Part shown: one piece after another, positions 13,904 through 60,578 of the stretch | Layout of the letters: every line of letters begins with the position of its first letter | Position numbering within the stretch: position 1 is the stretch's first letter | DNA from: Malacoraja senta | Lineage: Eukaryota | Direction: 5' to 3' | Length of the DNA stretch: 64,000 nt | NCBI GenBank assembly: GCA_038087875.1 | Contig: JAXLNO010002697.1 | Span: 62,001 to 126,000, forward strand | Notes under the pieces: model-generated | Database searches by the model: none | What the model was told of the DNA's origin: nothing | The model's input: only the letters and a program-made list of their open reading frames with translations | Translations under genes and position numbers: made by a program

Positions 13904-16900
13904 CAGCAGTTATCACCTATGTTTGCAGCTCGTGGAGAGGAGAGGAGATCAGGCACCTGGCACAATTCCAGGAACCTGACTCCGGTTAATCCACTCAGTA
14001 AACCGCTCACTTTAACAATACTAAATTCATTTTAAAATAGTTAAGAGATAAAGAGTGAGTAGGATATGGAATCGAATACATTTGACATATATATAAATTG
14101 TAACTGGGTGAAATAGAACTGAATTGGAAACGGTAATGACCCCATAGATTTTGGGTAATAAATACAGCGGGGCTAACTTTATACCAACTACGCCGGAAGC
14201 GTTATGGATGTCGTACCCCACAGACGAGTGGGCCACTCACTACGGTGTTGAAATTTTAGACACCGTAAATTTATTTGATTTATATATATTTTTTTTAATC
14301 ACAATATGTCACATCTGTGTGTTTTTTCTTCAAGGACAATCGCGCAGGAGAACTACCAAGGAAGTCTATAATAGAAATACTCCCAAAATAACCAGAGTCC
14401 GGAGGTATGAACGCACCACAATAATTAAGGTCATTAAAATTGGTAAAAATGCATGACGACAATCAAAAGAAAATAGGAGGAATCACATTATGTAGTTGGA
14501 ATATAAGGGGGATTAATGAACCTATTAAAAGGGGCAAGATACTAGCTCAGTTGAAATCATACAACACGGACATAGCGTTTCTACAGGAAACACATCTTAA
14601 ACAGCAAGATCAGACAAGACTGAGGGCGAACTGGATAGGCCAAACATTTCACTCTTCATTTACCTCCAAATCTAGAGGTACTGCAATTATTATTCGTAAA
14701 GGAATTCCATTTAAATCAAAGAACACTATTTTAGATAAGGAAGGGAGATATCTTATAGTAGCAGGGGAGATCAATAATATGCCAATTACGCTGGTAAACA
14801 TATATGCGCCCAACTTTGATAACCCTCAATTTTTTAATAAAATTCTGAATATAATTGCAGAATCTAATTATCAAAATGTTATAATCGGAGGAGATTTTAA
14901 TTGTGTTTTAGATCCTTATTTAGATAAATCGATGCAAAAACAAAAAGGTCAGACGAAATCTAAAACCAGTGAACTCTTACACACATATATGGAAAACACA
15001 AATATAACAGATGTATGGAGGATTGCAAACCCGACGGGAAGGGATTACTCGTTTTATTCAATGGTGCATAAAACATATTCACGGATAGACTATTTTCTTG
15101 TGGATACAAAATTAATTTCGCAATCTCTGAATCCTAAATATCATATTAATGCGATCTCAGATCATTCTCCGTTAACTTTTGTTCTAAAACTAGAAGGAAT
15201 GTCTATGAATAAACCGTTCTGGAGGTTTAACTCACAAATTTTAAAAGACCCTCAAGGGAGTATCTATCTAAAAAAACAGATGGATCTATTTTTTGAGTTA
15301 AATGATACACCAGAGATATCCCCCACGTTATTATGGGAATCCTTCAAAGCATTTATAAGAGGAGTCATTATTTCATTTCAAGCTTATCAAAATAAAAAGA
15401 ATAAGAATGAACAAAGACACTTAGAAGATCAAATAAAACAGTTAGATATAGATAATGCTAAAGACCCAACTATGGATAAACATAATAAAATACTACTACT
15501 GAAATTTCAGTTAAATAAATTACTGTCAGAGAAAGTTATAACATTATTTCAAATCACAAAACAAGAACACTTCGAATTCGGGGACAAACCCCACAAACTT
15601 CTAGCACGACAACTTAAAAAACGGGAAAAAGAGAATGCAATATTAAAGATTAAATCAGATAGAGGGGAAGTATTAACACTACCCAAGGATATTAATAAAA
15701 GATTTGCTCAATTTTACCAGAATCTATACACATCTAAAACGTCAATAGACAATAATAAAATCTCAGAATTTTTAGATAATTGTAATCTACCACAATTAGA
15801 ACGCAGGGAACAAGAGGAACTGGGAGCACAAATTACTTCTAAGGAGATAGAAGACACAATAAAAACACTAAAAAATGGAAAAACACCAGGACCAGACGGA
15901 TTCAGTAATGAATTTTATAAATCTTTTTATGATATAGTTACTCCACGATTACAAAAAATGTATACATATGCTTATAAAGAGCAAAACCTACCTGAAACAC
16001 TAGCGGAATCAACGATCATATTAATACTTAAAAAAGATAAAAATATAGAAGAACCAGGATCATATAGAGCTATTGCTTTGTTAAATACGGATCAGAAAAT
16101 AATAGCAAAAACATTAGCCAATAGATTAAGCAAGTATGTTAGTAGACTAATACATGAGGATCAAACAGGATTTATACCTAAGAGACACTCATTTAATAAT
16201 TTGAGACGTTTGCTTAACATAATGCATTCACATAAATCTTATGACCAAGAGTTAGCTATCATCTCACTGGACGCAGAAAAAGCGTTTGATCAAGTAGAAT
16301 GGGACTATATGATCAAAGTATTGCAAAAATTCCAATTGGGAGAAAACTTTATTGCATGGATAAAACTACTATATAACAAACCTACGGCTAGAATACTAAC
16401 TAATAATATATTATCTTCAAAATTCGAATTATCTAGGGGCAACAGACAAGGATGTTCACTATCACCGCTGTTATTTGCTTTGGTAATTGAACCCCTTGCT
16501 GAAAAAATAAGAACACACTCGAATATTCACGGTTATAACACAAAATATTCAAACAACAAACTATCCCTATATGCTGATGATGTACTACTGTACATCACAA
16601 AACCACAAATTAGTATACCAAATATATTAAACTTAATTGAGGACTTTGGATCCTTTTCAGGATATAGAATAAATTGGAACAAAAGTGAAATTATGTCGAT
16701 TAAACCAAAAGACTCAACACATCTCAGGAAATTCCCTTTTAAAATAGCTATGGAAAAATTCAAATATTTAGGAATTGAGATTACTAGAAATTACCATGAT
16801 ATGTTTAAAGCTAATTATAATCCCCTACTTAAGAAATTAAATAATCTGATTAAATTTTGGAAAACACTTCCGATGTCCTTAATAGGTAGGATAAATGCTA

Positions 16901-23207: not shown

Positions 23208-23358
23208 NNNNNNNNNNNNNNNNNNNNNNNNNNNNNNNNNNNNNNNNNNNNNNNNNNNNNNNNNNNNNNNNNNNNNNNNNNNNNNNNNNNNNNNNNNNNN
23301 NNNNNNNNNNNNNNNNNNNNNNNNNNNNNNNNNNNNNNNNNNNNNNNNNNNNNNNNNN
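23208..23358. other. Assembly gap (151 N)
   Basis: Run of N. Confidence 1.
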
Positions 23359-43807: not shown

Positions 43808-43813
43808 TTTATT
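43808..43813 (-). promoter_or_regulatory. Candidate polyadenylation signal (AATAAA) for the class I-like gene
   Basis: AATAAA on the minus strand about 580 nt after the stop codon; positional inference only. Confidence 0.3.
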
Positions 43814-43929: not shown

Positions 43930-44418
43930 TAGAACATAGAACAGTACAGCACAATAACAGGCCCTTTGACCCACAATGTTTGTGCCGAACATGATGCCAA
44001 GACCAATTGTTATCTGCTTGCACATAATCCATATCCATCCATACCCTGCATATACATGTGCCTATCTAAAAGTCTCTTAAATGCCACTATCATATCTGCT
44101 TCCACCACCACCCCCGGCAGCACATTCCAGTCACTCGCCACCCTTGGCGTAAAACACTTGTCCTGCACATCTTTTTTAAACTTTGCCACTCATTGCAAAG
44201 CTATACCTGCTCTTATTTGATATTTCCTTCCTGGGTAAAAAGTCAGATGGTCTACCCTATCGCTACTCCTCCCAGTTTGATATATTACTGTCAGGTCTCC
44301 CCTCAATCCCCGACATTCCAGAGAAAACAATCCAACTGCCCAGTCTGTCCAACTTCTCCCTGTGGCTAATACCCCACTAATCCAGGCATCATTCCGGTAG
44401 ACCTCCTCTGTATCCCAA
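43930..44418 (-). mobile_element. Old CR1 3' remnant overlapping the stop codon of the class I-like gene
   Basis: gatacagaggaggtctaccggaatgatgcctgg...gggcctgtt...(ctatgtt)n. Confidence 0.8.
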
Positions 44419-44618
44419 CGGAAGCTGATTGTGCTTCATGGTCACTGCAGTCCGCTGCTGGTCTCTGCTGTTGTCAGCTGGTCCCTGTTCATTGAAAGGT
44501 TTCATCTTTTTCCTCTTCTTCCAGCAACCAATTCCAAGGATGATCCCCAGGAGAATAAGAGGAACAATTACAGCTCCAGTCACGATCCTAATCTTTATAT
44601 CTTCTTTCGCTGCCATCT
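44389..44618 (-). CDS. MHC class I-like exon 5, connecting peptide, transmembrane helix and cytoplasmic tail (IVTGAVIVPLILLGIILGIGC-WKKRKK...)
   Basis: Acceptor caacag| in phase 1; about 21 hydrophobic residues followed by a basic stop-transfer cluster; open to TGA at 44389-44391. The true 3' end is uncertain. Confidence 0.8.
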
Positions 44619-44869
44619 CTGTTGGCATATATAGTGCATTTTAAACATGTATTGATCAATAACGACTTTGTAATGATTTTATTATCTACATTAAACTAGC
44701 ACTGTTCATATCTAATTACAAAGTAACAAAGTCTTAGATTTATGTAATTGTCCAGACGATGGATGTTTAAATAGATCAATGAAAAATCTTTGAAGTTCAT
44801 ATTAGCGTTGAGATTTTATCTGCAGCATTTAATTATGAATTTAAAGAATCAAGCATATGTCAGAAATAA

Positions 44870-45680
44870 AGATTCAAGATTCAAGATATTTTATTTGTCA
44901 CATTCACATACACCCGGGTGTAGTGAAGTGAAATGCTTTTTGCCATTATGCAGCACAAAAAAGAGAAGAATACAGACATCACACCAAGATAGTCTTAACA
45001 CTGAACATCCCCCCACAATGGCTCCCACCATGAGGGAAGGCACAAAGTCCAGTCCCCCACCCCAGTTCACCCATAGTTGGGCCCATTGAGGCCTCCACAG
45101 TTGCCTCTACGGAGGCCCGATGTTCCAGGCCGTTCTCGGCGGGTGATGTTGCTCCGGCGACGGGAGAGTCCTCCCAGCGGCCTGGGAACCCTGGAACGGC
45201 CGCTTCCGCACTGGGGGCCGCGGCTTCCGAAGCCAACAAGGCCGCGCCGGTTGGAGCTCCACAACTGGCGCTCTCATATAGAGATCCCAGGCTCCCGGTG
45301 TAAAGTTCAGCGCCGCTGCCCGCAGCTGGTCGCTCCACAGTCCCGCAGCCCCGCGATGTTTTCTCCAGTGATCCTCAGCTCACCGGAGCTCCAGCGCGGC
45401 GACCCGGGCAAGGCATCGCCCGCTCCGCGATAGCGCTCCAGCGCTGTGCCGCCGCCGAAGCCGAGGCTCTGGGCGGTCCCCAACAGGAAACGCCGCTCCA
45501 GGCCTGCTGGTAGGCCGCGAGGACGGGTCGAAGCTGCAGCCCAGAGAAAAGCTGCCTCTCCGGCCAGGTAGGGACCCTGAAAGGTAGTTTCCCCCTTCCC
45601 CCCCCACACAAAAAAGTCTAGACCTCCAAAACAAAACACTTTACTGACTAAAATAAAAAAGAAAGGTGAAAGGACAGACA
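44870..45680 (-). mobile_element. GC-rich non-autonomous repeat with L2-like (gaatctt)n tail; related pieces at about 34170-34500, 37050-37460 and 38541-38870
   Basis: Shared head/tail motifs and gagctcc-rich body; family unassigned. Confidence 0.45.
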
Positions 45681-45847
45681 GGTCAGCGCCCCCGGTGGTC
45701 TATTTGCAGTGTAGAGGTCAACAAGGCTATTTTCTTATGTTGACCATTGTTATTTTAGCAAATAAAAGTGAACCCATTTATAGTTGATAAAACTTCAAAG
45801 GTTTTAAACTTTGCTGATATTTAAATATCTGAGAGTTTGATATTTTC

Positions 45848-45864
45848 ACACACACGCACGCACG

Positions 45865-45896
<32 letters not shown>
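45848..45896. repeat. (CA)n/(CACG)n/(CG)n alternating purine-pyrimidine tract
   Basis: Directly visible. Confidence 0.95.
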
Positions 45897-46079
45897 GGTG
45901 CTGCTACTTCAGACTGATAATGAGGTTGGATGTGGCACCACTATTGGCCTTTTGTGCAACTAACTACTATCAAAAAAATTAGCTAGATGCCCAAGAAATA
46001 AGATAAGAGACCTTGGCCAGGATCAGCCTATCTTGCTTCCTACATTTGGATGTGTGAGTTAAGGGTGACAAGAATAATT

Positions 46080-46880
46080 TTTACCATTGGAGCAGAAGTA
46101 GGCCTTTCAGTCCATTGAGTCTACTCCACCATTCAGTCATGGCAGATCTATTTTTACCTCTGAATCCCATTCTCCAGCCTTCTCCCTGTAACTTTTGGCA
46201 CTCATAATAATCAAGAACCTATCATTCTCTGCTTTAAAATATGCAATGACTTGACCCACACAGCTGTCTGTATCAATGAATTCCACAGATTCACCACCCT
46301 GTGACTAAAGAAATTCCTCCTCATCTCCATTTTGAAAGTACGTATTTTTATTGTGAGGCTGTGCTAGACTCTCCCATTACTGAAAACATCCTATCCACAT
46401 CCACCAACTGGGACTTTCATTAACTGGCAGGTTTCAGAGATTTCCCCCTCATCCTTCTAAATTCCCACGAGTAGAAGCCCAGAGACTTCAAACATTCCTC
46501 ATACGTTAAATCAATCATCCCCAGGACATACTTCCTCTGGACCCTCTCCAAAGCCAGCACATCCTTTCTAATATGGAGCCCAAAACTGCTCACAATATTC
46601 CAAATGTGTCTTCACCAGTGCCCGATAAATCCTCAGCATTATATCATTGTTTTTATATTCTAGTCCCCCCGAAATGAATGCTGGCATTGCATTTGCCTTA
46701 CTTACCACTGACTCAATCTGCAAATGAACTATTTGGGAATCCTGCACTAGTATTCCCACTTTGTAGCCCAGATTTCTGAATTCTCTCCCCATTTAGAAAA
46801 TAGTCTATGTCTTTATTCCGACTGCCAAAATGTAAAACCAGACACTTGCTACACTGTATTCCATTTGGCTCTGCTTTGCC
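46080..46880 (-). mobile_element. CR1 3' fragment in intron 4
   Basis: KTHLEYCEQFWAPY. Confidence 0.85.
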
Positions 46881-46885
46881 CACTC

Positions 46886-47540
46886 GGTGGAACTGCTGCC
46901 TTACAGCGCCAGAGACCCAGTTCAATTCTGACTACGGGTCCCGTCTGTACAGAGTTTTGTACCTTCTCCCCGGGACTTGCGTGGGTTTTGCCTGGATCTC
47001 CGGTTTCCTCCCTCAGTCCAAAGACAGACAGGTTTGTAGGTTAATTGGCTTGGTATAATTGTAAATTGTCCCCTAATAAGTAAGATAATGTAAGTGTGCA
47101 GGGATCGCTGGTTGACGCAGACTCGGTGGGCTGAAGGGCTGGTTTCTGGGCTGTATCTCTTAAACTAAAACCACATTCCATTGACTATCAATAATTCTGG
47201 GCAATTAGATAACCACAAATTAATAATGGGTGGCACAGTGGCGTAGCAGTAGAGCTGCTTCCTTACTGCACCAGAGACCTGGGTTCGATCCTGACTACAG
47301 GTGCTGTCTGCAAGGACATTGTATGTTCTCCCTGTGACTGCGTGGGTTTTCTCCGGGTGCTCCGGTTTCCTCCCACACTCCAAAGAAATATGGGCTTGAA
47401 GGTTACTTGGCTTAGGTAAAATTGTAATTTGTCCCCAGTGTGTTGGTTAGTGTAAATGTACGGGATGATCACTGTTCAGCGAGGACTCAGTGAGCTGAGG
47501 GGTCTGTATCTGCACCATATCTCTAAAGTTTAAAGTCTAA
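46886..47540 (+). mobile_element. Two V-SINEs (46886-47170 and 47227-47540)
   Basis: A/B boxes, central domain and tails. Confidence 0.85.
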
Positions 47541-47635
47541 ATGCACAGCTTAGTTAAGAGTGTGAGTTGAGGCTGTTATCTCAGTCCAGGAGGTTTATTG
47601 TCTCAAGTGTTCAGCCGCATTGACTTGCCACTTAC

Positions 47636-47911
47636 CCTGTGGAACATTGACTCCCTGCAGCAGAGTTGCATGTTCGATGTAACAGGAGAATTTTGCCACA
47701 TCTTCTCTACTCAGTTGAATTGTATTCTTCAGCTGGTAAGTCCCATCCCAATTGGGCAACAGATCATCACTGGATTCAGACTTGTGGACCCCCTCACCAT
47801 CTCTCAGCCACGTTACATCGATGGCCCGTGGCTAGAAGCCTGTGACAAGGCAGGAGAGTCTCAGTGATTGCGACCCATCACTTTTAATCCCAATAAACAC
47901 CTCAGAGGTTT
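47636..47911 (-). CDS. MHC class I-like exon 4, alpha3 Ig-C1 domain with in-frame stop (LSCLVTGF*PRAIDVTW...PNWDGTYQ...FSCYIEHATL)
   Basis: Found by manual translation; it is absent from the ORF track because of the stop. Acceptor ttgcag|, donor |gtaagt, 92 codons; C-x3-GF(Y)P, W, DGTYQ and C-x3-H motifs. Confidence 0.92.
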
Positions 47912-48726
47912 CTGCAAGTGTAAGAAGCGTCAGAATCAGTGAAGACATGAACAAAAGCCTTCAATTGTAAGATCACTGCAACTCACCACTTTCCCAATCA
48001 GAGTTTTTTCTCTGGCTGAACTAAGTTTCCAGCCTAGACCCAAAATGCTGGAATAACTCAGCAGGTCAGGCAGCATCTCTGGAGAGAAGGAATGCCCAGA
48101 GATGCTTCTGACCCACTGAGTTACGCCAACATCTTCTATCTTCAGTGTAAACCAGCATCTGCAGTTCTATCTTGCACAAGGTTTACAGCCTTTTCTCTTT
48201 TCATTTTGCATTTCTGGCAAAACAACAAAACATTTAGTTTTAATACAACTGACATGCTCCTTATCTTAGCTCCAGACTTGAACTGACAGCACAGATGAAA
48301 GGGGAATGCAGGGCCCAATGGAGGAGTATAACTCACCATTGGGATTGATACTGTAGACATGATTGCTTCTATTTGTTCATGAATCTCAGCTGAATAATAA
48401 CACTAAATATTCCAAGAGGGAATGGGAGGAAGAAGTTCTTCAACCAGAGAACTGTTGGAAATTGAATGTCACCATCCCAAGGAGTAATAGAGGCAAATAG
48501 AGAATCTGATTGGGTTTCTGATCAGCACAGCAACAGACCCTTCAGGCCACAAGGTCGGTGCTAAACATAAGACCAAGATACATATTCCTCCATTTCCTGA
48601 ATATCTATATGACTGTGGATAAAGGACACTGGTACAATATTTATCTTTCACTTGCACTTCCTACCCACTGGCTCCATCTAAGAGGCATGTTGCCAGACAA
48701 TTTACTGATACCCTCGCCCAAGAACA

Positions 48727-49018
48727 GGGTGGCGAAGCGATCGAGCTACTGCCTTACAGCGCCAGAGACCTGGGTTTGTTACTAACTACGGGTGCTTGTT
48801 TTTACACAGTTTGTACGTTCTCCCTGTGACCTGCGTGGGTTTTATCCGAGATCTTCGGTTTCCCCTCACGCTCGAAAGACGTACAAATTTGTAGGTTAAT
48901 TGGATTGGTATAAATGCAAATTGTCCCTAGTGTGTGTAGGATAGTGTTAGTGTGCGGGCATGGCTGCTCGGTGCGGTGTCGGTGGGCTTCCGAGCTGTAT
49001 CTCTAAACTAAACTAAAT
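48727..49018 (+). mobile_element. V-SINE
   Basis: tRNA-like head and (CTAAA)n tail. Confidence 0.85.
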
Positions 49019-49116
49019 AATTACTCAAGTGACAGCCTGACGTGCATGATATTTCCCACCTGATCTATCCAGAGGATATCCTCTGGCCCATCAGTCAGAG
49101 TGCCTACGTCGTGTAC

Positions 49117-49398
49117 CTCTCCTCTGTAGTGCTTCTTGTCCACACTCCAGATATATCCGCAGCCACTTCACACAGTCCTTCTCCAGGAGATCTTTAAAAT
49201 ACTTGTTCATGAAGGTGTTGACATTCCACCGATCTGCTAGCATCTGGAAATCTGGACGTAGTGCAATCCAGAACATTCTGTCCTTGTCAAAAGCACAGGC
49301 ATCCTCCCCATCATAACCCAGTCTGACAAACCCATCAGTGGAATTGTCACTGTCCACTTCACAGCCGCAGAAACCCTGCACAAAGAAAACAGCTTGGG
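49117..49398 (-). CDS. MHC class I-like exon 3, alpha2 domain (QAVFFVQGFCGCEV...GYDGED...DRW...DCVKWLRIYLECG)
   Basis: Acceptor cctcag|, donor |gtacac, 94 open codons; GC..GYDG.D..W..W..C..WL..YL signature of class I alpha2. Confidence 0.95.
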
Positions 49399-50462
49399 CT
49401 GAGGTAGGGGTGGAGGATTTGGGTTGGGGTGAGTGGATGGAAGGGAGAGGCAATTTACAAATCAGTTCTCAGCATGGTACAAACAGGCATAACAGAACAC
49501 AACATAGAGCTGTACAGCACAGGAGCAGGTTTAGTTCAGAGATACAGCGCCGAAACAGGTCCTTCGGCCCACCGAGTCCGCACTGACCAGTGGTCCCCGC
49601 ATATTAACTATCCTACACAGACTACTTTTCTTTCCAGCTTTCTCCACCCTACTCCATCACTCTAAATGGTCCTGGTCTCATATGTTTTCTGTCCATTTGT
49701 CCACAGCATGCTGCCTGACTCGTTGAGTTCCTCCTGTTTGTTTTTAATTCAGATTGGCAGCATCTGCAGTTTGCTGTGACTCCATCTTAGCACAATGGAT
49801 GATCAATGTGGATTCAGTGAGCAGAAGGGCCGGTTTCCATGATGTGTGACTCAATGACCCATGGTCTATATACTGAGGGCATGGACTAACCTCAAGTGTT
49901 GAGGGGGGAAGCTTTACTGTTGCGGATGTAACACTAAAGGAGTTCTGCTGTGTCAGAAGGGTAGAACTCAGATTCTGCACTTTCGTACATAAAGAACAGA
50001 GGAAGGAGTGCATTGTCAGATGGGCAATGTTATACAGTGAACAGGTCAGTCTCAAGGTTAAGGCAATGCAGATGGGTAGTACATCAAGGCTGTTGCACAG
50101 TGTGGGATTGCTACACTCTCTGTGGATTGCTGCCAATATTGAGGGAATGCTGGATTAACAGAATATTATTGTTGAGGGAATACATCATAGTCACCATCAA
50201 CCAGCTTAAATCAAGGTCCCATCTCTAGGTGATCAGGCTATAAATAAACTAATGGTTTCTCCCTCATTCCAGCCCAATAAAACAGATGATCCAATCCATC
50301 CACTTTTTACTGGTGTTAAATATCAAATGCTTAACCCATAAAGAGACTATCACCAGCCAACTGTTATCAATGGGTGTTCAGCAGTTAGGACACATTAAAT
50401 ATAGACGATGGGCCGTGTCTCTATCAAAATGTGATGGAGTAAATGTCTGAAACAGCATCAAT

Positions 50463-51498
50463 TAGGTATGTTACAAAACCTACCTTCAGTCGCGCTGTAA
50501 TTCTGCCACTGGCCGTATGCGCGATTTTGGCGCCTTTAAGGGGGGGCGGGGTTAAAACGCGGGTTTCTCCTTCCTTGTCCTAGTTAATATTTTGTTGGAG
50601 TACAAGCGCTGGCTGATGAATCGTTCCTACCGGCGTTTTGTGAATTTTTTATTTTTATTAAATCGTCAATGTCAGCGCTAGAGTAATTTTAAAAGCAGCT
50701 CCTGAAGCGTCAACGCCGATAACGGGGACGGATTTCACACACGGGACAGGTAAACGAAAGTGGTTTCTTTAAATGTATAAAAGTGCTTCTTAAGAAGCCT
50801 TTAATTCACATTTTTTCATGCGACACGGTGATTTTATTCCCCGAACTAACGGCAGTATTTTTCATGCCAATACGGGGTTAAATTCACCGCAAATGAACGT
50901 TCCAAATGATCGCGTTCCAGAAATCCTCACTCGCAAAATGAATTAAATGCCCATTAATTTACAGGTATTAAACATTCAATTCCTTCCATTTGGCCTGTAA
51001 ATTCATGAAAATGAGATTTAAAAGTTATGTTATATTGTGAATTATTGTGTGAATGTTATTTGGACACTTAGGCTATTTAAAAATGTTAATCTATTCTTAA
51101 GAAATTGATAGATGTTTAGATCTAGTAATTGAATTTTGTAATTAGCTACAATTAGGTAACTAACTAATTATATGCTTTAATTTCAAGTCATCCATACTTT
51201 CATGTCTTCTAAGTAAGATTGTTTCATATTTGTTTCAGAATGCTTCAATCTATAATAACTGAAAATGTCTTTCAGTTATCTTAATTTTTAAGAAAGTTAT
51301 GGGCTTTTGACTGTCCTCGATCACAGCTTTTGTGTTAAGTCAATGGAAAAGCAATAGGGAACAAGATGGCCATAACTTCTTTAATACTGAAGATATGAAA
51401 GTGAATTAGGTGTCAAATTAAACTTCTTTTTATGCTTTATCTGATGGGATAAATTGCAGACTTTATTTTTAAAATCTCAAAATTTTGTAACATTGCTA
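50463..51498 (-). mobile_element. Non-autonomous DNA transposon, TAG termini, perfect 7-bp TSD CATCAAT (copy 2)
   Basis: TSD at 50456-50462 and 51499-51505; inverted homolog of 322-1368. Confidence 0.85.
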
Positions 51499-51505
51499 CA
51501 TCAAT

Positions 51506-52110
51506 GGTGCTGAAGTGAAAAAGGTTGAGAGTTTCTGGTTCCCCTACTGCCTCAGGAGACTAAGGAAATGCGGCATCTCCAATGACTCTTACAAACGTCT
51601 ACAAATGTGCCATAGAAAGCATACTGACAGGTTGTATCACAACTTAGTTTGGAAAGAGTTCTGCCCAAGACCGCTGGAAATTGCAGGGAGGTGGAGATGT
51701 AGCACAGTCGATCACACAAACATGATTCCCCACCAGTGAATCCACCTGTATTTCAACTGGTTCAGGAAAGCAGACAACATAATCAAAGATTCATCCCGCT
51801 CTGGTCATTCCTTCTTCTTCCTGCAGAAGGTACGTAAGCATTAAAGCGTGCACCACCAGACTCAGTAACTGTTTCCTCCCCTATGTTGTCTGGTTTATGA
51901 ACAGTCCTCCCTTATGCTAGGGTTCACCTCAACCCCATTGTAGACACTGGACTTTGTCTCTGGCACTGGTGCCTTACAATGCTGAGAACTACATTCTGCA
52001 CTCTTTGCTCTACCTATTGTACGAGTTTGGTTTGATTGTATTTATGAATAGTTTTCTTTGATGTGATTGACTAACATGCAAAAAAAGTGTATCAGAGAAT
52101 CATGTGACAG
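51506..52110 (+). mobile_element. L2-clade LINE 3' fragment
   Basis: INGAEV.KVESF...LRRLRK...IESILTGCIT-like residues. Confidence 0.7.
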
Positions 52111-52181
52111 CAACAAAACTAAAACAAAATCCATTTGTTCCATCACTGGGTGTCTACCCCAGGTCCGGTCATGACACTTAC

Positions 52182-52442
52182 TCGAGATACCATGTTGCTG
52201 TTGGTAGACTATCTCAGCATTTCCTCTGACAATCCCATGAAAACCTGCAACTGTGATGGCCATTGAATCCCATTGATCCTGCGGGCAAGACTGGGCCATC
52301 CATCGCTGTCTGGGAATAGCCAGCTCTAGTGTGCTTTCAAAATATGCTATCTGGAGGTCATCCAGCATTGCTACCATACTGTACTCAGGCAGCTCACTCA
52401 ATCCATGGTTCAACAGGTAGTAAGATGCAAGATGGTGTAAAT
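52182..52442 (-). CDS. MHC class I-like exon 2, alpha1 domain (DLHHLASYYLL...AMLDDLQIAYFES...PRQRWM...QWDSM...HGIS)
   Basis: Acceptor ttgcag|, donor |gtaagt, 87 open codons; motifs match class I alpha1 (H-x-L start, DD-x-Q, PR-x-x-WM, W60). Confidence 0.9.
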
Positions 52443-52619
52443 CTGCAATGCATAAACAATAATAAATATGATTGTATCATTCACTGAAAATAACTAAGAG
52501 TTATTAAACTGATAACAATACAATAACTTTGAATAAGGGAGTCACAAGGACCTGCAGATGCAAGTGCTGGATGAACTCAGTGGGGCAGGCAGCATCAATG
52601 ATCAGGTGACAATTTGTGT

Positions 52620-52940
52620 CAGGAGCCTTTAGTTTAGTTTTTAGCTTAGAGATACAGCATGGAAACAGGCCCTTCGGGCCACTGAGTCCACACTGACCAG
52701 CAACCCCCACACGCTAACACTATCCTACACACACAAGGGACAATTTACATTCTACACCAAGCCAATTAAACTACAAACCTGTACGTCATGGAATGTGGGA
52801 AGAATCTGAAGATCTCAGGAAAAACCCACCCGGTCAGGTGGAGAATGTACAAACTCCATACAGACAGGACCCGTAGTCAGGATCCAACCTGGGCATTGGT
52901 GCTGTAAGGGCGATAAGGCAGCATCTCTAATGCTGCACCA
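52620..52940 (-). mobile_element. V-SINE
   Basis: Central domain and tail. Confidence 0.8.
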
Positions 52941-53494
52941 CTGATCCTTCTACAAGAGTTGGCTAGATGGGCTCTGATACCTATTCCACCAATTGTGGTC
53001 GAGGTATTGAATGATCCTATTGGATTGCTTCCCATCTTCAAAGATCTATTATTATCTATCATGTCGATACAGCCTACTAGTTACAATATTCCAAAATTCA
53101 AAGAATATTTTATTATATTAAGAAAATGGACAACGTCAAGGAGATTCAGCAGGGAATCAGGGCCTACGGCTGAATGGCCTAATTCAATCATGGCTGCTCT
53201 ATCTCGCCCTCTCAACCACATTCCCTGCTTTCGCCCCATAACCCTTGACACCCATACTGATCAAGAATCTGTCAATATCCACCTGAGAAATATCCATTGA
53301 CGTGGGCTCCACGGCTGTCTGAGGAGGCCCATATCCTTCTAAACCTATCTATCCATGTACCAGATTAAATGTTTCTTAAATGTTGCGATAGTACCTGCCT
53401 GAACTCCCTTCTCCGGCAGTTCATTCAGTACTCCCACCAAAGCTATGCCTCTGGTTCTTATTAAATCTTTCCCCCCTCATTTTAAACTTATGTA

Positions 53495-55026
53495 TTCATT
53501 TTTTGCCCATTTTGGTTTCACCATGTAGAAATTACACCTGTGTTTATACATAGTCCCCCCATTTCAGGGCACCATAATGTTTGGGACATGGCTTCGCAGA
53601 TGTATGTAATTGCTCAGGGGTATTTAAATGCCTCCTTAATGCAGGTATAAGAGAACTCAGCATCTAGTCTTTCCTCCAGTCTTTCCATCACCTTTGGAAA
53701 CTTTTATTGCTGTTCATCAACAGGAGGACCAGAGTTGTGCCAATGAAAGTAAAAGAGACCATTATGAGACTGAGAAACAAGAATAAAACTGTTCGAGACA
53801 TCAGCCAAACCTTAGGCTTACCAAAATCAAACTGTTTGGAACATCATTAAGAAGAAAGAGTGCACTGTGAGCTTACTAATCGCAAAGGGACTGGCTGGCC
53901 AAGGAACACCTCCACAGCTGATGACAGAAGACTTCTCTCTATAATAAAGACAAAACCCCAATCCTTTACTAATCGCAAAGGGACTGACAGGTCAGAAACA
54001 CTCATCAGGAGTCAGGTGTGGATTTGCCAATGACCACTGTCCGCAGAAGACTTCATGAACAGAAATACAGAGACTGCACTGCAAGATGCAAACCACTGTT
54101 TAGCCACAAAAACAGGATGGCCGGGTTACAGTTTGCCAAGAAGTACTTAAAAGAGCAACCACAGTTCTGGAAAAAGGTCTTCTGGACAGATGATACAAAG
54201 ATTAACTTATATCGGAGTGATGCCAAGAGCAAAGTATGGAGGAGAGAAGGAACTGCCCTAGATCCAAAGCATACCACCTCATCTGTGAAACACGGTGGTG
54301 GGGGTGTTGTGGGCTGGGCATGTATGGCTGCTGAAGGTACTGGCTAACTTAGCTTTGTTGACCATTCAGCTACTGATGGTAGCAGCATAATGAATTCTGA
54401 AGTGTATAGACACATCCTATATGCTCAAGTTCAAACACATTGGCCTCAAAACACATTGCCCAGCGGTTCATACTACAGCAAGACAATGATCCTAAAGCAA
54501 CAAAGGAGTTTTTCAAAGCTAAAAAATTGTTAATTCTTGAGTGGCCAAGACAATCACCCGATCTGAACGCAACTGAGCATGCCTTTGATATGCCAAAGAG
54601 AAAACTGAATGGGGACTAGCCCCCAAAACAAGCACAGGCTGCAATACAGGCCTGGCAGAGCATCGCCAGAGAAGTCACCCAGCAACTGGCGATGTCCATG
54701 AATCACAGACTTCAAGCAGTCATTGCATGCATAGGATATGCAACAAAATACTAAACATGGCTACTTTCATTTACATGACATTGCTGTGTCCCAAACATTA
54801 TGGTGCCCTAAAATGGGGCAGACTATGTATTTTGTGACTATGTAAATTGACTGCTGTAATTTCTACATGGTGAAACCAAAATGTTTAAAAAATTGCCTTT
54901 TTTTTAATCTGACAATGTGCACTTTAACCACATGTGATTTTTTTCTATTACAAATCTCAAATTATGGAGTACAGAGGCAAATAAATATATGATGGGTCTT
55001 TGTCCGAAACATTATGGAGGTCACAG
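53495..55026 (+). mobile_element. Tc1/mariner transposon (long IR/DR-type TIRs), defective; left TIR truncated
   Basis: Frameshifted transposase 53742-54757 (MKVKETIMRLR...TVRRRLHE...WTDDTK...KHGGG...QQDNDPK); repeated ccataatgtttgggaca; right end followed by TA. Confidence 0.9.
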
Positions 55027-55404
55027 TATGTACGATCAATTCACACTGGCCAATTTACCTCTCAGCCTCTCATCTTTGGAATATTGGGAGAAACTGGAAT
55101 AACCAGAGGAAGCACACATGGTTTCAGGGAAAGAATAAAAGTGCCACACAGGTTGTAGTAGAGATCGGGATTGAGTCCAGGTCCTCATAGGCACCATCTC
55201 TATGAGCTGCAACCCTGAAATGCCCATCTGGTGGGAAATCTCTGCATGGAATGGGGCACTTCTGACTTATGAGGACATTGGGATTCTGTAACAGTAAGTG
55301 TAAAGAAGACCTTACTGATGAGTCCCGACTATCAAGGCTTGGGTGGGGTGGGGGGTGGGGGTGGGGTCGGAGCAGACTATAATAAACAGGGTCTAAACTG
55401 AAAC

Positions 55405-55940
55405 TCGACACATACTGGAGTAACTTAGTGGGTCAGGCAGCATCTCCGGAGAAAAGGAAAAGGTGACGTTTCGGGTCGAGACCCTTCTTCAGACTGAGAA
55501 TCAGGAGACAGGGAACCAAGCGATATGAAAAGGTACATAGAACAAATTAATAAAAGATATACCCCCGACTCTGTCTGAAGAAGTGCCTTGACCTGAAACG
55601 CCATCTATTCCTTTTCTCCAGCGATGCTGCCTGACTTCCTGATTTACTCCAGCTTTTTGTGTCTATCTTCGGTGTAAACCAGCATCTGCATCACCAGTCT
55701 GAAGAAGGGTCTAGACGCGAAACATCACCCATTTCGTCTCTCCAGAGATGCTGCCTGTCCCGCTGAGTTACTCCAGCTTTTTGTGTCTATCTTCGGTTTA
55801 AATCAGCATCTGCAGTTCCTTCTTACACATCTAAACTGATGTCTAAACTGAAACATCACCTATCCATGTTCTCCAGACATACTGCCTGACCTGCTGAATT
55901 ACTCCAGCATTTTATGTGTATTAACCAGCATCTGCATTTT
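55405..55940. mobile_element. Cluster of four Penelope-like terminal repeat units (one minus, then three plus in tandem)
   Basis: Cores at 55465-55492 (-, intact), 55575 (+, decayed), 55699 (+, decayed) and a partial unit at about 55845. Confidence 0.75.
55465..55492 (-). ncRNA. Minimal hammerhead ribozyme core, intact, sense to the class I pre-mRNA (intron 1)
   Basis: Reverse complement reads CTGAAGAAGGGTCTCGACCCGAAACGTC. Confidence 0.7.
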
Positions 55941-56614
55941 CTTGTTTCTACATGAATAAGCAGTATTTGTTCTGTGATAAAGTTTCCATGCAGCACACCA
56001 GACAGTGTCAAAGTTCAGTGTCAAAGTGAGGTGAGAAGGGGCCCCAAAGGGAGAGTTAGAAGTGTCTGTTTCAGTGTTACCAGGAGAAACATAAGAAGGC
56101 TAGTGGAATACAGTAATGATAAAATCCACGTGACTTCCCAAAACACTCCACAACCAAGGATTTTTGTTTTATATGTTATTATTTCAACAGGGGAATCACC
56201 ATTTTATATTTACTTTCATCTGATAACAATGGGATTAAACTTTCAGGATGAGTAGGTTTGTAATCTCCAAGCCTTCACGATTGTCAGAATAGTTAGAAAG
56301 GAAGCATTGTGTGGGAAGAAATTGCTCATCAGATTCCCATTAAATCTTCCCCCCCCCCCCTCAATTTAAACCTATGTCTTCTGGTTCTCGATTCTGTAAT
56401 CTGTTGAATATGTTGCCCACTTGAAAATTTCCAGATTTAGATTGATATATTTTTGTTCATTAAGGGTGTAATGGGTTAGAGCTCAGCCACAATGTCTGTG
56501 CCGAACATGATGTCAAGTTAAACTAAACTGCTTGTACATGATTCATATCCCTCAAGTCCCTACATATCCACGTGCCTATCCTCAAGCTTCTTAAATCTCA
56601 TTATCGTCTTCTGG

Positions 56615-59497
56615 GGAAGTCGTGGATAGAGCCTGGATTGACACCTGGAAGTATGTTGTTGTGGCGATCAGTGACACATGGTTGCAGGAGGGCTGTGATT
56701 GGAAACTAAATATTCCAGGATTTCGTTGCTTCTGGTGTGATAGAATTGGAGGGTCAAGAGGTGGGGGTGTTGCATTGCTTGTCAAGGAAGATATTACAGC
56801 AGTGCTTTGGCAGGATAGAGTAGAGGGCTCGTCTAGGGAGGCTATTTGGGTGGAACTGAGAAATGGGAAAGGTGTAGCAACACATATAGGGGTGTATTAT
56901 AGACCGCCTAATGGGGAGCAAGAATTGGAAGAGCAAATATGTAAGGAGATAGCAGATATTAGTAGTAAGCACAAGGTAGTGATTGTGGGAGATTTCAATT
57001 TTCCACACTTAGACTGGGAAACACATACTGTAAAAGGGCTGGATGGTTTGGAATTTGTAAAATGTGTGCAGGATAGTTTTTTGCAGCAATACATAGAGGT
57101 ACCTACTAAAGAAGGGGCAGTGCTGGACCTCCTGTTAGGAAATGAGACAGGGCAGGTGGCGGAGGTGGGCGTTGGGGAGCACTTCGGGTCCAGTGATCAC
57201 AATACCATTAGTTTCAATATAATTATGGAGAGGATCAGAACTGGACCTAGGGTTAAAATTTTTGATTGGAGAAAGTCTAACTTTGAGGAGATGCGAAAGG
57301 ATTTAAAAGGAGTGAATTGGGACATGTTGTTTTATGGGAAGGATGTAGTAGAGAAATGGAGGACATTTAAAGGTGACATTTTAAGAGTACAGAATCTTTA
57401 TGTCCCTGTTCGGTTGAAAGGAAATAGTAAAAATTGGAAAGAGCCATGGTTTTCAAGGGAAATTGGACACTTGGTTCGGAAAAAGAGAGAGATCTACAAT
57501 AATTATTGCCAGCATGGAGTAAATGAGGTGCTTGAGGAGTGTAAAGAATGTAAAAAGAATATTAAGAAATAAATTAGAAAAGCTAAAAGAAGATATGAGG
57601 TTGCTTTTGCAAGTAAGGTGAAAGTAAATCCAAAGGGTTTCTACAGCTATATTAATAGAAAAAGGATAACAAGGAATAAAATTGGTCCATTAGAGAGTCA
57701 GAGTGGACAGCTATCTGCAGAGCCAAAAGAGATGGGGGAGATATTGAACAATTTTTTTTCTTCGGTATTCACCAAGGAGAAGGATATGGAATTATGTGAG
57801 GTAAGGGAAACAAGCAGAGTAGCAATGGAAACTATGAGATTCAAATAAGAGGAGGTGCGGACACTTTTGAAAAATATGAAAATGGATAAGTCTCCAGGTC
57901 CTGACAGGATATTTTCTAGGACAGTGAGGGAAGTTAGTGTAGAAATAGCAGGGGCTATGACAAAAATATTTCAAATGTCATTAGAAACAGGAATAGTGCC
58001 GGAGGATTGGCGTACTGCGCATGTTGTTCCGTTGTTTAAAAAGGGTTGTGAGAGTAAACAAAGCAATTATAGACCTGTTAGTTTGACGTCAGTGGTGGGC
58101 AAATTAATGGAAAGGATACTTAGAGATAATATATATAAGCATCTGGATAAGCAGGGTCTGATTAGGAACAGTCAACATGGATTTGTGCCTGGAAGGTCAT
58201 GTTTGACTAATCTTCTTGAATTTTTCGAAGAGGTTACTAGCGAAATTGATGAGGGTAAAGCAGTGGATGTTGTCTATATGGACTTCAGTAAGGCCTTTGA
58301 CAAGTTTCCTCATGGAAGGTTGGTTAAGAAGATTCAATTGTTCGGTATTAATGGTGGAGTAGCAAGATGGATTCAACAGTGGCTGAATGGGAGATGCCAG
58401 AGAGTAATGGTGGATGGCTGTTTGTCAGGTTGGAGGCCGGTGACTAGTGGGGTGCCTCAGGGGTCTGTGTTGGGTCCACTGTTGTTTGTCATGTACATCA
58501 ATGATCTGGATGATGGTGTGGAAAATTGGATTAGTAAGTATGCAGATGATACTAAGATAGGTGGTGTTGTGGATAATGAAGTAGATTTTCAAAGTCTACA
58601 GAGAGATTTAGGCCATTTGGAAGAGTGGGCTGAAAGATGGCAGATGGAGTTTAATGCTGATAAATGTGAGGTGCTACATCTCGGTAGGACAAATCAAAAT
58701 AGGACGTACATGGTAAATGGTAGCGAATTGAGGAATGCAGTTGAACAGAGGGATCTAGGAATAACTGTGCATAGTTCCCTGAAGGTGGAATCTCATGTAG
58801 ATAGTGTGGTAAAGAAAGCTTTTGGTGTGCTGGCCTTTATAAATCAGAGCATTGAATATAGAAGTTGGGATGTAATGTTAAAATTGTACAAGGCATTGGT
58901 GAGGCCAATTCTGGAGTATGGTGTACTATTTTGGTCGCCTAATTATAGGAAGGATGTCAACAAAATAGAGAGAGTACAGAGGAGATTTACTAGAATGTTG
59001 CCTGGGTTTCAGCAACTAAGTTACAGAGAAAGGTTGAACAAGTTAGGGCTTTATTCTTTGGAGCGCAGAAGGTTAAGAGGGGACTTGATAGAGGTCTTTA
59101 AAATTATGAGCGGGTTAGACAGAGTTGACGTGGATAAGCTTTTCCCATTGAGAGTAGGGAAGATTCAAACAAGGGGACATGACTTGAGAATTAAGGGACA
59201 GAAGTTTAGGGGGAACATTAGGGGGAACTTCTTTACTCAGAGAGTGGTAGCTGTGTGGAATGAGCTTCCAGTGGAAGTGGTGGAGGCAGGTTCGATTTTA
59301 TCCTTTAAAAATAGATTGGATGGGTATATGGACGGGAAAGGAATGGAAGGGTATGGTCTGGGTGCAGGTAGATGGGACTAGGGGGAAGTAAGAAGAAAGA
59401 AGGGGGAAGGAAAAAAAAAGTGTTCGGCACGGACTTGAAGGGCCGAGATGGCCTGTTTCCGTGCTGTAATGGTTATATGATTATATGGTTATATGGA
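56615..59497 (+). mobile_element. Young CR1 LINE, near-complete ORF2 with two in-frame stops (57570, 57846), antisense in intron 1
   Basis: APE motifs (GDFN, SDH) and RT motifs (GVPQGSVLGP, YADD) in one frame; (TGGTTATA)n tail. Confidence 0.95.
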
Positions 59498-59699
59498 AGT
59501 GGTGGTGATGTAATGGATAGGGTCTGCAGTACAGGAAGCATGCAACAAACAACAAGATGGCAACAACATTAACACAACATTGATTTGTCATTTGATGCAG
59601 GCTGAATTTTACCATCATGTGGGTGTCTAACACCAGCTGAGGAAATCTTGGAGAGGTGGAACACCTACTAATGCAGAAGTCACTTCTTTATTGAAAGTG

Positions 59700-60130
59700 C
59701 ACATCACCGGTTTACCTGAATTCTGTCTGAGGTATTAGTGCAAGAACAGATTGGACAAACATGGATTGTTTTCTCTTGTATACTGGAGGTTGAAGGGAGA
59801 CCTGATGAAAGTGCATAACATGGTGAGAGGCACAGACAGAGTGGACAGCCAGAACCTTTTTCCCAGGGTGGAAATGTTGAAGACCAGAGAACATCACTTT
59901 AAGGTTGGAGAAGCAATGTTCAAAGGAGATGAGCGGAGCAAGTTGTTTTATGTGGAGGGTGGTGGACACCTGTACTGCGCTGCCAGTGGTGGTGATGGTG
60001 GTGGCAGATATAACAGTTACATTTCAGAGGCTTTTAGATAGGTACATAGATAGGCAGGGAATGGCCGGATACAGATCACATACAGGTAGAGGAGATTAGT
60101 TTATTTTGTTCGGCACAGACATTGTGGGCG
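59700..60130 (+). mobile_element. Old CR1 3' fragment
   Basis: GLFSLVYWRLKGDLMKV. Confidence 0.8.
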
Positions 60131-60195
60131 AAGGTAGACAAAATGCTGGAGTAACTCAGCAGGTCAGGCAGCATCTCTGGATAAAAGGAATGGGT

Positions 60196-60223
60196 GACGT
60201 TTCAGGTCGAGACCCTTCTTCAG
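60196..60223 (-). ncRNA. Minimal hammerhead ribozyme core, near-intact (G.U at base of stem II), intron 1
   Basis: Reverse complement reads CTGAAGAAGGGTCTCGACCTGAAACGTC. Confidence 0.55.
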
Positions 60224-60526
60224 ACTGAAGGACTGAAGGAACTGCTCCTGTGCTGTATTGTCCTATGTTCTATGTTCATTATTTACCTGTATTCAGTTCC
60301 TCTGTTCATTGGATTGCCAAGGTAACCATAGTGTATATAACTTCCCACAGGTGCTTTTACAACTCAGGAATGACCGTTACCCAAAATTATTAATACATTC
60401 AATTCAATCATTCAATTAATACATCCAAGACAATGTACCCAGGGCAAACACAGGGACTGTGCAACAGTAAATAGAATCAGTTTTGTTGTTTCCTCAAAGT
60501 TCACAAGTAGAAGGAGCATTGCTTAC

Positions 60527-60578
60527 CAGAGGAGACAGTGGCCACACCGTAAGTGTTGAGTAAGGTAAAAAGAAGCAT
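60527..60578 (-). CDS. MHC class I-like exon 1, signal peptide MLLFTLLNTYGVATVSS
   Basis: ATG with A at -3 (aacATG), 17 mostly hydrophobic codons ending in small residues, phase-1 donor G|GTAAGC; joins alpha1 in frame. Confidence 0.75.

What the first reader, a model, noticed from the sequence alone, without database searches (positions are those of the whole stretch)
44389..60578. Divergent non-classical MHC class I gene with a CD1-like remodelled groove
Seen: a complete exon set reconstructs to a class I heavy chain. By manual alignment to HLA numbering, most peptide-terminus anchors are lost (Y7->S, Y59->Q, Y123->A, T143->L, Y159->L; only W147 and Y171 kept, K146->R). Several features parallel human CD1d as I recall it: AMLDDLQ vs AWLGELQ, QDQW vs DQQW, GCEVDSDNST vs GCEVHPGNAS (same N-glycan position), and LLEKDC vs LLNGTC. 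Class I-type PRQRWM, GYDGED and W133/W147 are retained. Inference: a lipid- or small-ligand-binding lineage that is either an intermediate between class I and CD1/EPCR or a convergent copy of them.
Basis: partly seen in the sequence, partly recalled or inferred. Interest (0 to 1): 0.8.

Follow-up and report, generated by a model that had tools for sequence, protein, structure and literature searches.

The report
Broken skate UGA-sister MHC class I gene
This is a real five-exon MHC class I-like gene of a skate, from an old shark-and-ray lineage with a very greasy groove that sits next to the lipid-binding "UGA" gene. This copy carries a stop codon and is most likely a dead duplicate, not a link between class I and CD1.

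Summary
The exon set is real. Five minus-strand exons (leader, alpha1, alpha2, alpha3, TM/tail) have canonical phase-1 splice sites and join into a 361-codon class I heavy chain. "Complete" overstates it: alpha3 holds an in-frame TAG at the Tyr of GF-Y-P (47832-47834).

The gene is neither CD1 nor MR1. It falls with full support in a conserved shark-and-ray lineage that NCBI auto-names "MR1-like", with about one gene per species. That lineage is sister to UGA (PDB 9ch4, 37-39% identity) and far from UFA (8gm8). In Leucoraja a UGA copy lies on the same 127-kb contig, and in sawfish the lineage sits in the MHC-Ib cluster.

The lineage's predicted groove is the most hydrophobic of all groups compared, matching CD1b on that measure, and is almost invariant. 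Common ancestry with CD1 is neither supported nor rejected (AU p 0.27).

This copy also has changes at lineage-invariant sites, including F7S and H59Q, and dN/dS of 0.78 against an intact paralogue. It is probably a recent pseudogene or null allele. The scan had already found an intact copy of this lineage elsewhere in this genome (s1-140257).

The parts
60527..60578 (-). Exon 1: start codon and 17-residue signal peptide, with a phase-1 donor (G|gtaagc)
   Evidence: The same peptide is encoded upstream of alpha1 in Leucoraja L001:100-150 (100% identical) and Pristis L003:5581-5631 (94%). Shark orthologues P0153 and P0155 start with a near-identical leader.
52191..52442 (-). Exon 2: alpha1 domain (252 nt)
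   Evidence: The best PDB match is 9ch4 (shark UGA) at 75.7 bits. It carries the window-specific changes F7S, D->E, V->I, F->C and H59Q at lineage-invariant columns.
49117..49392 (-). Exon 3: alpha2 domain (276 nt), with the Cys101/Cys164 pair, an extra groove-floor Cys at HLA position 99 and the DNST sequon. An equally in-frame acceptor lies 6 nt upstream (exon start 49398).
   Evidence: Pfam MHC_I E 2e-16. 95% identical to P0001.
47636..47911 (-). Exon 4: alpha3 Ig C1-set domain (276 nt), interrupted by a stop codon
   Evidence: the part after the stop matches C1-set at E 2e-8; its best PDB match is 9ch4.
47832..47834 (-). In-frame TAG replacing the conserved Tyr of the GFYP motif (codon 220)
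   Evidence: The orthologues and the paralogue P0001 have TAC/Tyr here.
44389..44618 (-). Exon 5: connecting peptide, transmembrane helix and a roughly 45-residue cytoplasmic tail ending in TGA. There is no YxxI/YQNI motif.
   Evidence: P0001 and Pristis have the same single-exon TM plus tail layout. Skate UGA instead ends in RRDYQNI.
43808..43813 (-). AATAAA, a possible polyadenylation signal about 575 nt after the stop (tentative)
   Evidence: Pattern match only.

Best explanation
The stretch is a paralogous copy of a conserved elasmobranch nonclassical MHC class I gene. NCBI auto-names this lineage 'MR1-like'; I call it lineage A. It is the sister of the shark/ray UGA gene and lies beside it in the MHC-Ib region.

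Shown: the exon structure, the lineage placement, the loss of peptide-terminus anchors and a very hydrophobic, almost invariant set of predicted groove residues.

Inferred: intact members pair with beta2-microglobulin through a normal alpha3 domain. They hold a hydrophobic, lipid-like ligand in a groove lined by Leu, Ile, Val, Met, Phe and small Gly/Ala residues, with a few polar residues near the top (H59, T66, N77, Q84, R146, D163) and an invariant free Cys at floor position 99. They display this ligand at the cell surface without the tyrosine-based endosomal sorting tail that UGA and CD1b have.

This particular copy is most likely non-functional. A TAC->TAG change truncates the chain at codon 220, between the two Ig cysteines of alpha3 (214 and 270) and before the membrane anchor. 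The stop lies in the fourth of five exons, so the mRNA should also be a target of nonsense-mediated decay (inferred). The inactivation is recent, because all splice sites and the rest of the frame are intact.
For: Structure: five exons, canonical sites, all phase 1, with Pfam MHC_I and C1-set matches.

Lineage: win_gene pairs with Leucoraja P0001 (100*), inside a ray clade, inside a 13-row one-per-species clade (100/100*). That clade is sister to UGA (98/97*) in the alpha1-alpha3 and alpha1-alpha2 trees. The alpha3-only tree also gives lineage A at 98*. 9ch4 is titled 'shark nonclassical MHC class I, UGA' and 8gm8 'UFA'. The lineage profile scores 172.6 bits to 9ch4 against 73.7 to 8gm8.

Linkage: P0001 and a UGA copy, P0240, are on one 127-kb contig with consecutive accessions. 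Pristis P0151 is LOC127585976, marked MHC-Ib on the sawfish MHC chromosome.

Groove.

Model: AF2 on P0001:1-283 gives pLDDT 91 and a class I fold; the best match is 9ch4 at Z 27.8, rmsd 1.9 over 267 residues.

Pseudogene: TAG. At 116 columns invariant in at least 8 non-skate orthologues the window copy departs at 12, 7-8 of them private, while P0001 departs at 5, 0-1 private. dN/dS against P0001 is 0.78. A second Leucoraja copy (L002) is also dead, with a stop at the Cys164 codon.

Sister-lineage lipid binding: PMC12562908.
Against: Polarised by Pristis, nonsynonymous to synonymous counts are similar on the window branch (20:7) and the P0001 branch (15:6). Relaxed constraint is therefore not specific to this copy, except at invariant columns.

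No RNA run was found for this gene, so expression is unknown in either direction.

Lipid binding is inferred from residue composition and from a personal-communication statement about UGA and UFA.

The species of the window is not established, so whether P0001 is a paralogue or an orthologue rests on an earlier scan note (s1-140257).
Confidence: 0.65

Rival explanations
1. The gene is functional. The TAG is an assembly or base-calling error, or one allele of a polymorphism, and the locus encodes a working extra copy of the UGA-sister molecule with an altered A pocket (F7S, H59Q).
For: There is only one disabling change. All ten splice sites, the start codon and the remaining 360 codons are intact. 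Synonymous divergence from the intact copy is low (dS 0.069).
Against: Private replacements at 7-8 lineage-invariant columns against 0-1 in P0001. dN/dS is 0.78. A third skate copy is clearly dead, so copies of this gene do decay in skates.
Confidence: 0.2
2. The lineage, together with UGA, is the cartilaginous-fish counterpart of CD1 by common descent, as the first reader proposed ('intermediate between class I and CD1/EPCR').
For: Groove hydrophobicity equals that of CD1b. Forcing lineage A, UGA and CD1b into one clade costs only 4.7 lnL units (AU p 0.27). Chicken CD1-1 is the second-best cluster representative by structure at Z 26.0. PMC10751288 and PMC12562908 call UFA and UGA 'CD1-like'.
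Against: No CD1 chain is in the top 60 PDB sequence matches for alpha1, alpha2 or the lineage profile, while fish, bird and shark class I and MR1 are. PF16497 scores stay below its cutoff and far below PF00129. In the free trees CD1b joins the long chimaera branch, not lineage A plus UGA. The structural Z values of CD1, ZAG, HFE and classical class I are tied within 1 unit. Only mammalian CD1b was sampled. There is no YxxPhi tail.
Confidence: 0.1
3. The stop is bypassed by skipping exon 4, which is phase 1-1 and 276 nt long and therefore in frame. This would give an alpha1-alpha2-TM protein with EPCR/ULBP-like architecture.
For: Exon 4 is symmetrical, so skipping it keeps the frame.
Against: There are no RNA data at all. 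The splice sites of exon 4 are canonical and strong. All orthologues keep alpha3.
Confidence: 0.04
4. It is an MR1 orthologue, as the NCBI product name of its relatives suggests, and presents small metabolites through a Schiff base.
For: MR1 chains are the best PDB sequence match for alpha2 alone (64 bits).
Against: Marsupial MR1 nests among tetrapod class I, away from lineage A. Forcing them together costs 29 lnL units (AU p 0.10). By hand alignment of the alpha1 sequences, the position of MR1 Lys43 holds Ala, Thr, Ile or Cys in lineage A.
Confidence: 0.02

Closest known systems
Shark/ray nonclassical class I UGA (PDB 9ch4, released 2026-03-18; skate proteins XP_032898133, XP_055521885)
   Same: It is the sister lineage (98/97* support). 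A UGA copy lies on the same 127-kb Leucoraja contig as the intact paralogue P0001. Both share the motifs LNHG, AGFHG, (M)N.YFK.LLE.DC and A123, and have lost most peptide anchors. UGA is the best structural match (Z 27.8) and gives the best alpha1 and alpha3 sequence matches.
   Different: Only 37-39% identical. UGA keeps Y7 and Y59 and has a less hydrophobic groove (+0.58 against +1.28). UGA has a short tail with RRDYQNI; an earlier scan note places it on a separate exon. This lineage has a long Tyr-motif-free tail in the TM exon.
[quoted passage not shown]
   Same: About 90% protein identity. The genes are collinear, introns included, at 85-92% DNA identity, and share the leader, exon layout and tail.
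   Different: P0001 is intact (TAC at the GFYP codon) and keeps F7 and H59. The two differ by transposon insertions in introns 1 and 3.
CD1 (mammalian CD1b sampled; chicken CD1-1 3jvg by structure)
   Same: The groove positions are comparably hydrophobic, the class I peptide anchors are lost, and there is the same three-domain, presumably beta2m-type architecture.
   Different: No significant preferential sequence similarity. PF16497 scores are below its cutoff, there is no endosomal YxxPhi tail, and the phylogenetic link is unresolved.
Shark UFA (PDB 8gm8, released 2024-11-27)
   Same: It is an elasmobranch nonclassical class I described as CD1-like. It shares the MLDDLQI strand motif in alpha1.
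   Different: Much more distant: 73.7 bits to the lineage profile against 172.6 for UGA, and Z 22.0.
MR1
   Same: It gives the best PDB score for the alpha2 exon alone, and NCBI names the lineage after it.
   Different: It lies in a different clade, and the Lys43 equivalent is missing.

Membership tests
MHC class I heavy chain superfamily | An alpha1-alpha2 platform (PF00129), a C1-set alpha3 and a TM segment, each domain on its own phase-1 exon, with the Cys101-Cys164 pair | tested here: met
Classical peptide-presenting class I (elasmobranch UAA) | Conserved peptide-terminus anchors Y7, Y59, Y/R84, T143, K146, W147, Y159, Y171 | tested here: not met
   Only W147 and Y171 are kept, and K146 is R. 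The gene lies outside the UAA-like clade.
UGA-sister lineage ('MR1-like' of NCBI; lineage A here) | Membership of the one-per-species shark and ray clade | tested here: met
   100/100* clade of 13 rows. 54-72% identity among orthologues, then a drop to 33-36%.
UGA-sister lineage ('MR1-like' of NCBI; lineage A here) | Lineage signatures: the MLL.TLLN leader, FH.LAFYY, MLDD.QI, AGFHG, FFVQG.CGC with a Cys at floor position 99, the DNST sequon, FMNKYFK.LLEKDCVKW, and TM plus a long tail in one exon | tested here: met
   This copy departs at F7S and H59Q and has a stop in alpha3.
UGA (PDB 9ch4) | Placement inside the UGA clade with high identity to 9ch4 and its orthologues | tested here: not met
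   37-39% identity. It is sister to that clade, not inside it.
UGA (PDB 9ch4) | Short cytoplasmic tail with the RRDYQNI sorting motif | tested here: not met
   The tail has no YxxI, whereas skate UGA P0237 and P0239 have it.
UFA (PDB 8gm8) | Close sequence relation to 8gm8 | tested here: not met
   73.7 bits for the lineage profile, below shark UAA at 108. 32% identity.
CD1 | Match to the CD1/EPCR-type platform profile (PF16497) above its threshold, or CD1 as the nearest sequence relatives | tested here: not met
   22.7-32.8 bits against a cutoff of 35, and PF00129 at 78-97 bits. No CD1 in the top 60 PDB hits.
CD1 | Common clade with CD1 | tested here: inconclusive
   The clade is not recovered, but it is not rejected either (AU p 0.27). 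Only CD1b was sampled.
CD1 | Large hydrophobic ligand cavity | tested here: inconclusive
   Residue composition fits. Cavity volume and depth could not be computed.
MR1 | Lys43 for the Schiff-base ligand, and membership of the MR1 clade | tested here: not met
   The equivalent position is Ala here and Ala, Thr, Ile or Cys in orthologues (hand alignment of the sequences). MR1 groups with tetrapod class I.
EPCR | An alpha1-alpha2 platform joined directly to the TM segment, with no alpha3 | tested here: not met
   An alpha3 exon is present with strong splice sites. Exon skipping is untested.

The most novel reading that the evidence does not exclude
The UGA-sister lineage could be a third elasmobranch lipid-presenting class I molecule. 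I found no name for it in the literature I could search. It has an invariant, extremely hydrophobic groove and a free groove-floor cysteine, and unlike UGA and CD1b it would load at the surface or in the secretory pathway rather than in endosomes. In skates it has started to multiply. The window copy would then be a young, still-expressed variant (the TAG being polymorphic or an error) whose A pocket was remodelled (F7S, H59Q) for a different ligand.
Probability: 0.15. Interest if true: 0.6.

Novelty: new member of a known kind. Interest (0 to 1): 0.4.

Why it matters
Sharks and rays are the oldest animals with an MHC. Recent structures of UFA and UGA suggest that lipid presentation is as old as peptide presentation. 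This gene shows that UGA has a conserved sister lineage with an even greasier groove and no endosomal sorting tail. It also shows that skates carry extra, decaying copies of that lineage. The intact paralogue, not this copy, is therefore a good target for lipidomics and structure work. The result is also a caution that the 'MR1-like' database names in elasmobranchs are misleading. The window copy itself is probably a pseudogene, useful mainly for dating the duplication.

Tried and rejected
- **Reads.** The TAG, expression and splicing could not be checked.
- **Sequencing runs.** The look-up of sequencing runs found two likely same-species DNA holders and no RNA holder.
- **Other class I exons.** A search for further class I exons in the window found none.
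- **Neighbouring genes.** The large ORFs elsewhere in the window are LINE endonuclease/reverse transcriptase or have no Pfam match. The window gives no synteny information.
- **Literature.** Searches for the PDB codes, for UFA/UGA and for a possible 'UHA' name found no primary paper. The two J Immunol papers on UDA and UEA are not held, so what I say about them is from memory of their abstracts.
- **Pfam PF16497 as a CD1 signal.** Rejected as a marker, because MR1 scores higher on it than this lineage does.
- **Structure ranking.** It does not discriminate: CD1, ZAG, HFE, MR1 and classical class I all lie within about 2 Z units.
- **Branch-specific N:S counts.** These did not single out the window copy.
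- **CD1 sampling.** The CD1 search returned only mammalian CD1b, so the CD1 question stays open.
- **Modelling this copy.** The window's own spliced protein could not be handed to the structure tool because it has no single reference. P0001:1-283 (90% identical) was modelled instead.
Full report
**1. What is in the sequence**

On the minus strand between 60578 and 44389 there are five exons. All have canonical AG/GT borders and all junctions are in phase 1.

| Exon | Coordinates | Length |
|---|---|---|
| Leader | 60578-60527 | 52 nt |
| alpha1 | 52442-52191 | 252 nt |
| alpha2 | 49392-49117 | 276 nt |
| alpha3 | 47911-47636 | 276 nt |
| TM/cytoplasmic | 44618-44389 | 230 nt, ends in TGA |

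Joined, they give 1086 nt. Pfam recognises alpha2 as MHC_I (E 2e-16), alpha1 weakly (E 1e-3) and the part of alpha3 after the stop as C1-set (E 2e-8).

The leader exon lies 8 kb upstream because a LINE sits in intron 1. It is validated by identical or near-identical leader exons at the same relative place in Leucoraja and Pristis and by the N-termini of shark orthologues. A second in-frame acceptor 6 nt upstream of the alpha2 exon is equally possible. This does not affect any conclusion.

The set is not intact. Codon 220, the Tyr of the GFYP motif of alpha3, is TAG (47832-47834). The same reader filed this separately (s1-140872). No other class I exon lies in the window. The rest of the window is mostly LINE sequence.

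**2.

I mapped HLA-A2 numbering through an alignment with a reptile classical-like sequence. The window gene has S7, Q59, Q84, A123, L143, R146, W147, L159 and Y171. The table is therefore correct.

Two of these residues are peculiarities of this copy and not of its lineage. All orthologues have F7 and H59.

**3. Which gene family it belongs to**

- *Orthologous group.* Searching with P0001 gave roughly one hit per species in rays and sharks: Pristis 72%, Hypanus 67%, Mobula 66%, Pristiophorus, Heptranchias, Scyliorhinus and Cetorhinus 60%, Stegostoma 58%, Hemiscyllium 57%, Mustelus 56% and Chiloscyllium 54%. Identity then drops sharply to 33-36% for all other class I sequences.
- *Trees.* The window gene pairs with P0001 inside a ray clade. 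That clade lies inside this 13-row lineage (100/100*), which is sister (98/97*) to a clade holding Pristiophorus, Leucoraja and Amblyraja proteins.
- *Identity of the sister clade.* Foldseek and VIA-align titles identify it. 9ch4 is 'Crystal structure of shark nonclassical MHC class I, UGA' and 8gm8 is '... UFA'. 9ch4 is the best PDB match of alpha1 and alpha3 and of the lineage profile (172.6 bits). It is only 37-39% identical, though, and a carpet-shark orthologue of my lineage is about as far from it. UFA scores 73.7 bits.
- *Conclusion.* The gene is neither UGA nor UFA. It is UGA's sister lineage.
- *Tails.* Skate UGA proteins end in RRDYQNI. This lineage has a long tail without a Tyr motif, encoded in the TM exon.
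- *Other named lineages.* From memory of their abstracts (the papers are not held), UDA keeps 8 of 9 anchors and UEA is absent from rays. Neither fits.
- *Name.* I found no name for this lineage in the searchable literature.

**4. Genomic context of the lineage**

P0001 and a UGA copy (P0240, XP_055486429.1) lie on the same 127,421-bp Leucoraja contig and have consecutive accession numbers.

The Pristis orthologue P0151 is at CM019888.1:13,956,125-13,977,896. This is LOC127585976, flagged 'MHC-Ib' in the sawfish MHC map of Verissimo et al. 2023. It is the first of four MHC-Ib genes next to TRIM39-like genes. The lineage is therefore MHC-linked, as that paper states for all elasmobranch class Ib genes.

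**5. CD1, MR1 or class I?**

*Sequence.* The lineage is class I-like. No CD1 chain is among the 60 best PDB hits for alpha1, alpha2 or the lineage profile, whereas carp, chicken, duck and shark class I and MR1 are. PF00129 scores 78-97 bits. PF16497 scores 23-33 bits, below its 35-bit cutoff and below what MR1 itself scores.

*MR1.* MR1 (Antechinus) nests among tetrapod class I. Forcing it together with lineage A and UGA costs 29 lnL units (AU p 0.10). By hand alignment of the alpha1 sequences, the Lys43 equivalent is Ala in this copy and Ala, Thr, Ile or Cys in orthologues. The NCBI name is therefore misleading.

*CD1.* CD1b forms a very long branch that joins the chimaera sequences in the free tree. 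Holding CD1b with lineage A and UGA costs only 4.7 lnL units (AU p 0.27). Common descent with CD1 is thus neither shown nor excluded, and only mammalian CD1b could be sampled.

*Structure.* An AlphaFold2 model of P0001:1-283 (pLDDT 91) has the class I fold. 9ch4 is the best match at Z 27.8. Chicken CD1-1, ZAG, HFE, classical class I and MR1 are all tied at Z 25-27. Fold therefore does not discriminate between them.

**6. The groove**

I compared groups over 41 HLA pocket positions.

| Group | Mean Kyte-Doolittle | Charged residues |
|---|---|---|
| Lineage A (UGA-sister) | +1.28 (range 1.06-1.46) | 2 (R146, D163) |
| CD1b (alignment less certain) | +1.40 | 4 |
| UGA | +0.58 | 4.3 |
| Chimaera class I | +0.40 | 8.3 |
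| Multicopy shark clade | +0.26 | 6.0 |
| MR1 | +0.17 | 6 |
| Shark classical-like | +0.12 | 8.0 |

- The pocket residues are almost invariant between sharks and rays.
- They include small residues at G69, G76, G97 and A123, and an invariant cysteine at floor position 99.
- This pattern fits one conserved hydrophobic ligand and not a peptide repertoire.
- A review reports, as a personal communication, that UFA and UGA crystal structures and mass spectrometry indicate lipids like those bound by CD1d (PMC12562908).
- Lipid binding by this sister lineage is therefore a reasonable inference but is not shown. I could not compute cavity volume.

**7. State of this copy**

*Relation to the intact copy.* The window gene is collinear with the Leucoraja P0001 locus through exons and introns at 85-92% identity. 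The two differ by transposon insertions.

*A third copy.* A further Leucoraja copy (L002, the source of the odd model P0021) has a stop at the Cys164 codon and no alpha1 within reach.

This agrees with my independent placement. It implies that the window copy is an extra paralogue.

*Signs of decay.* The evidence is mixed.

- At 116 columns invariant in at least 8 non-skate orthologues, this copy departs 12 times. Seven or eight of these are private: F7S, D->E, V->I, F->C, H59Q, P->S, the stop and S->F.
- P0001 departs 5 times at those columns, with 0-1 private.
- Pairwise dN/dS is 0.78.
- Polarised with Pristis, however, both skate branches have similar N:S counts (20:7 and 15:6). Constraint seems to be loosened in both.

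*Expected effect.* The stop lies 195 nt before the last exon junction, so nonsense-mediated decay is expected (inference). Any product would lack the second Ig cysteine and the membrane anchor.

*Limits.* I could not confirm the TAG in reads, and no RNA data were found.

**8. Verdict**

The functional reading, a hydrophobic non-peptide groove, is supported at the level of the lineage. The evolutionary reading, a new intermediate towards CD1/EPCR, is not.

The gene is a member of an annotated, MHC-linked lineage sister to the structurally solved UGA. This copy is most likely a young pseudogene or null allele. The lineage itself deserves experimental work, using an intact copy.

Noticed in passing
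window 14440-18240 (+): An uninterrupted 1266-aa ORF with endonuclease and reverse-transcriptase domains. It is an apparently intact LINE ORF2 and possibly a young, active element.
   Followed up: partly
window 56622-59381 (+): A LINE fragment (endonuclease ORF of 316 aa plus reverse-transcriptase ORF of 508 aa) is inserted in intron 1 of the class I gene, antisense to it. It is absent from the Leucoraja paralogue's intron.
   Followed up: partly
L002:11725-14217 (Leucoraja erinacea JAMYXN010000412.1): Another copy of the same lineage is a pseudogene, with a stop at the Cys164 codon of alpha2 and no alpha1 exon found. The RefSeq model XP_055486496.1 built on it is an artefact. GPR139-like genes flank it.
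   Followed up: partly
L001:100-150 and L003:5581-5631: The RefSeq models of the orthologues miss the true leader exon. XP_055486430.1 is 'partial'. The sawfish model (P0151) has a 72-residue N-terminal extension that is probably wrong, because a conserved MLLFTLLNTY... leader exon lies upstream of alpha1 in both loci.
   Followed up: yes
protein set (P0164-P0224): A 55-row, shark-only, multicopy class I clade (100* support) lacks Y7, Y159 and Y171 but keeps T143, K146 and W147. It is probably the published UEA family. No ray sequence fell in it.
   Followed up: no
lineage alignment A1 (HLA position 99; P0001 residue 97): An invariant unpaired cysteine lies on the groove floor in all 12 orthologues, next to the structural Cys101. 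Rays add a further Cys at position 124.
   Followed up: no
window 23208-23358: A run of 151 N (assembly gap or mask). It was left untouched.
   Followed up: no
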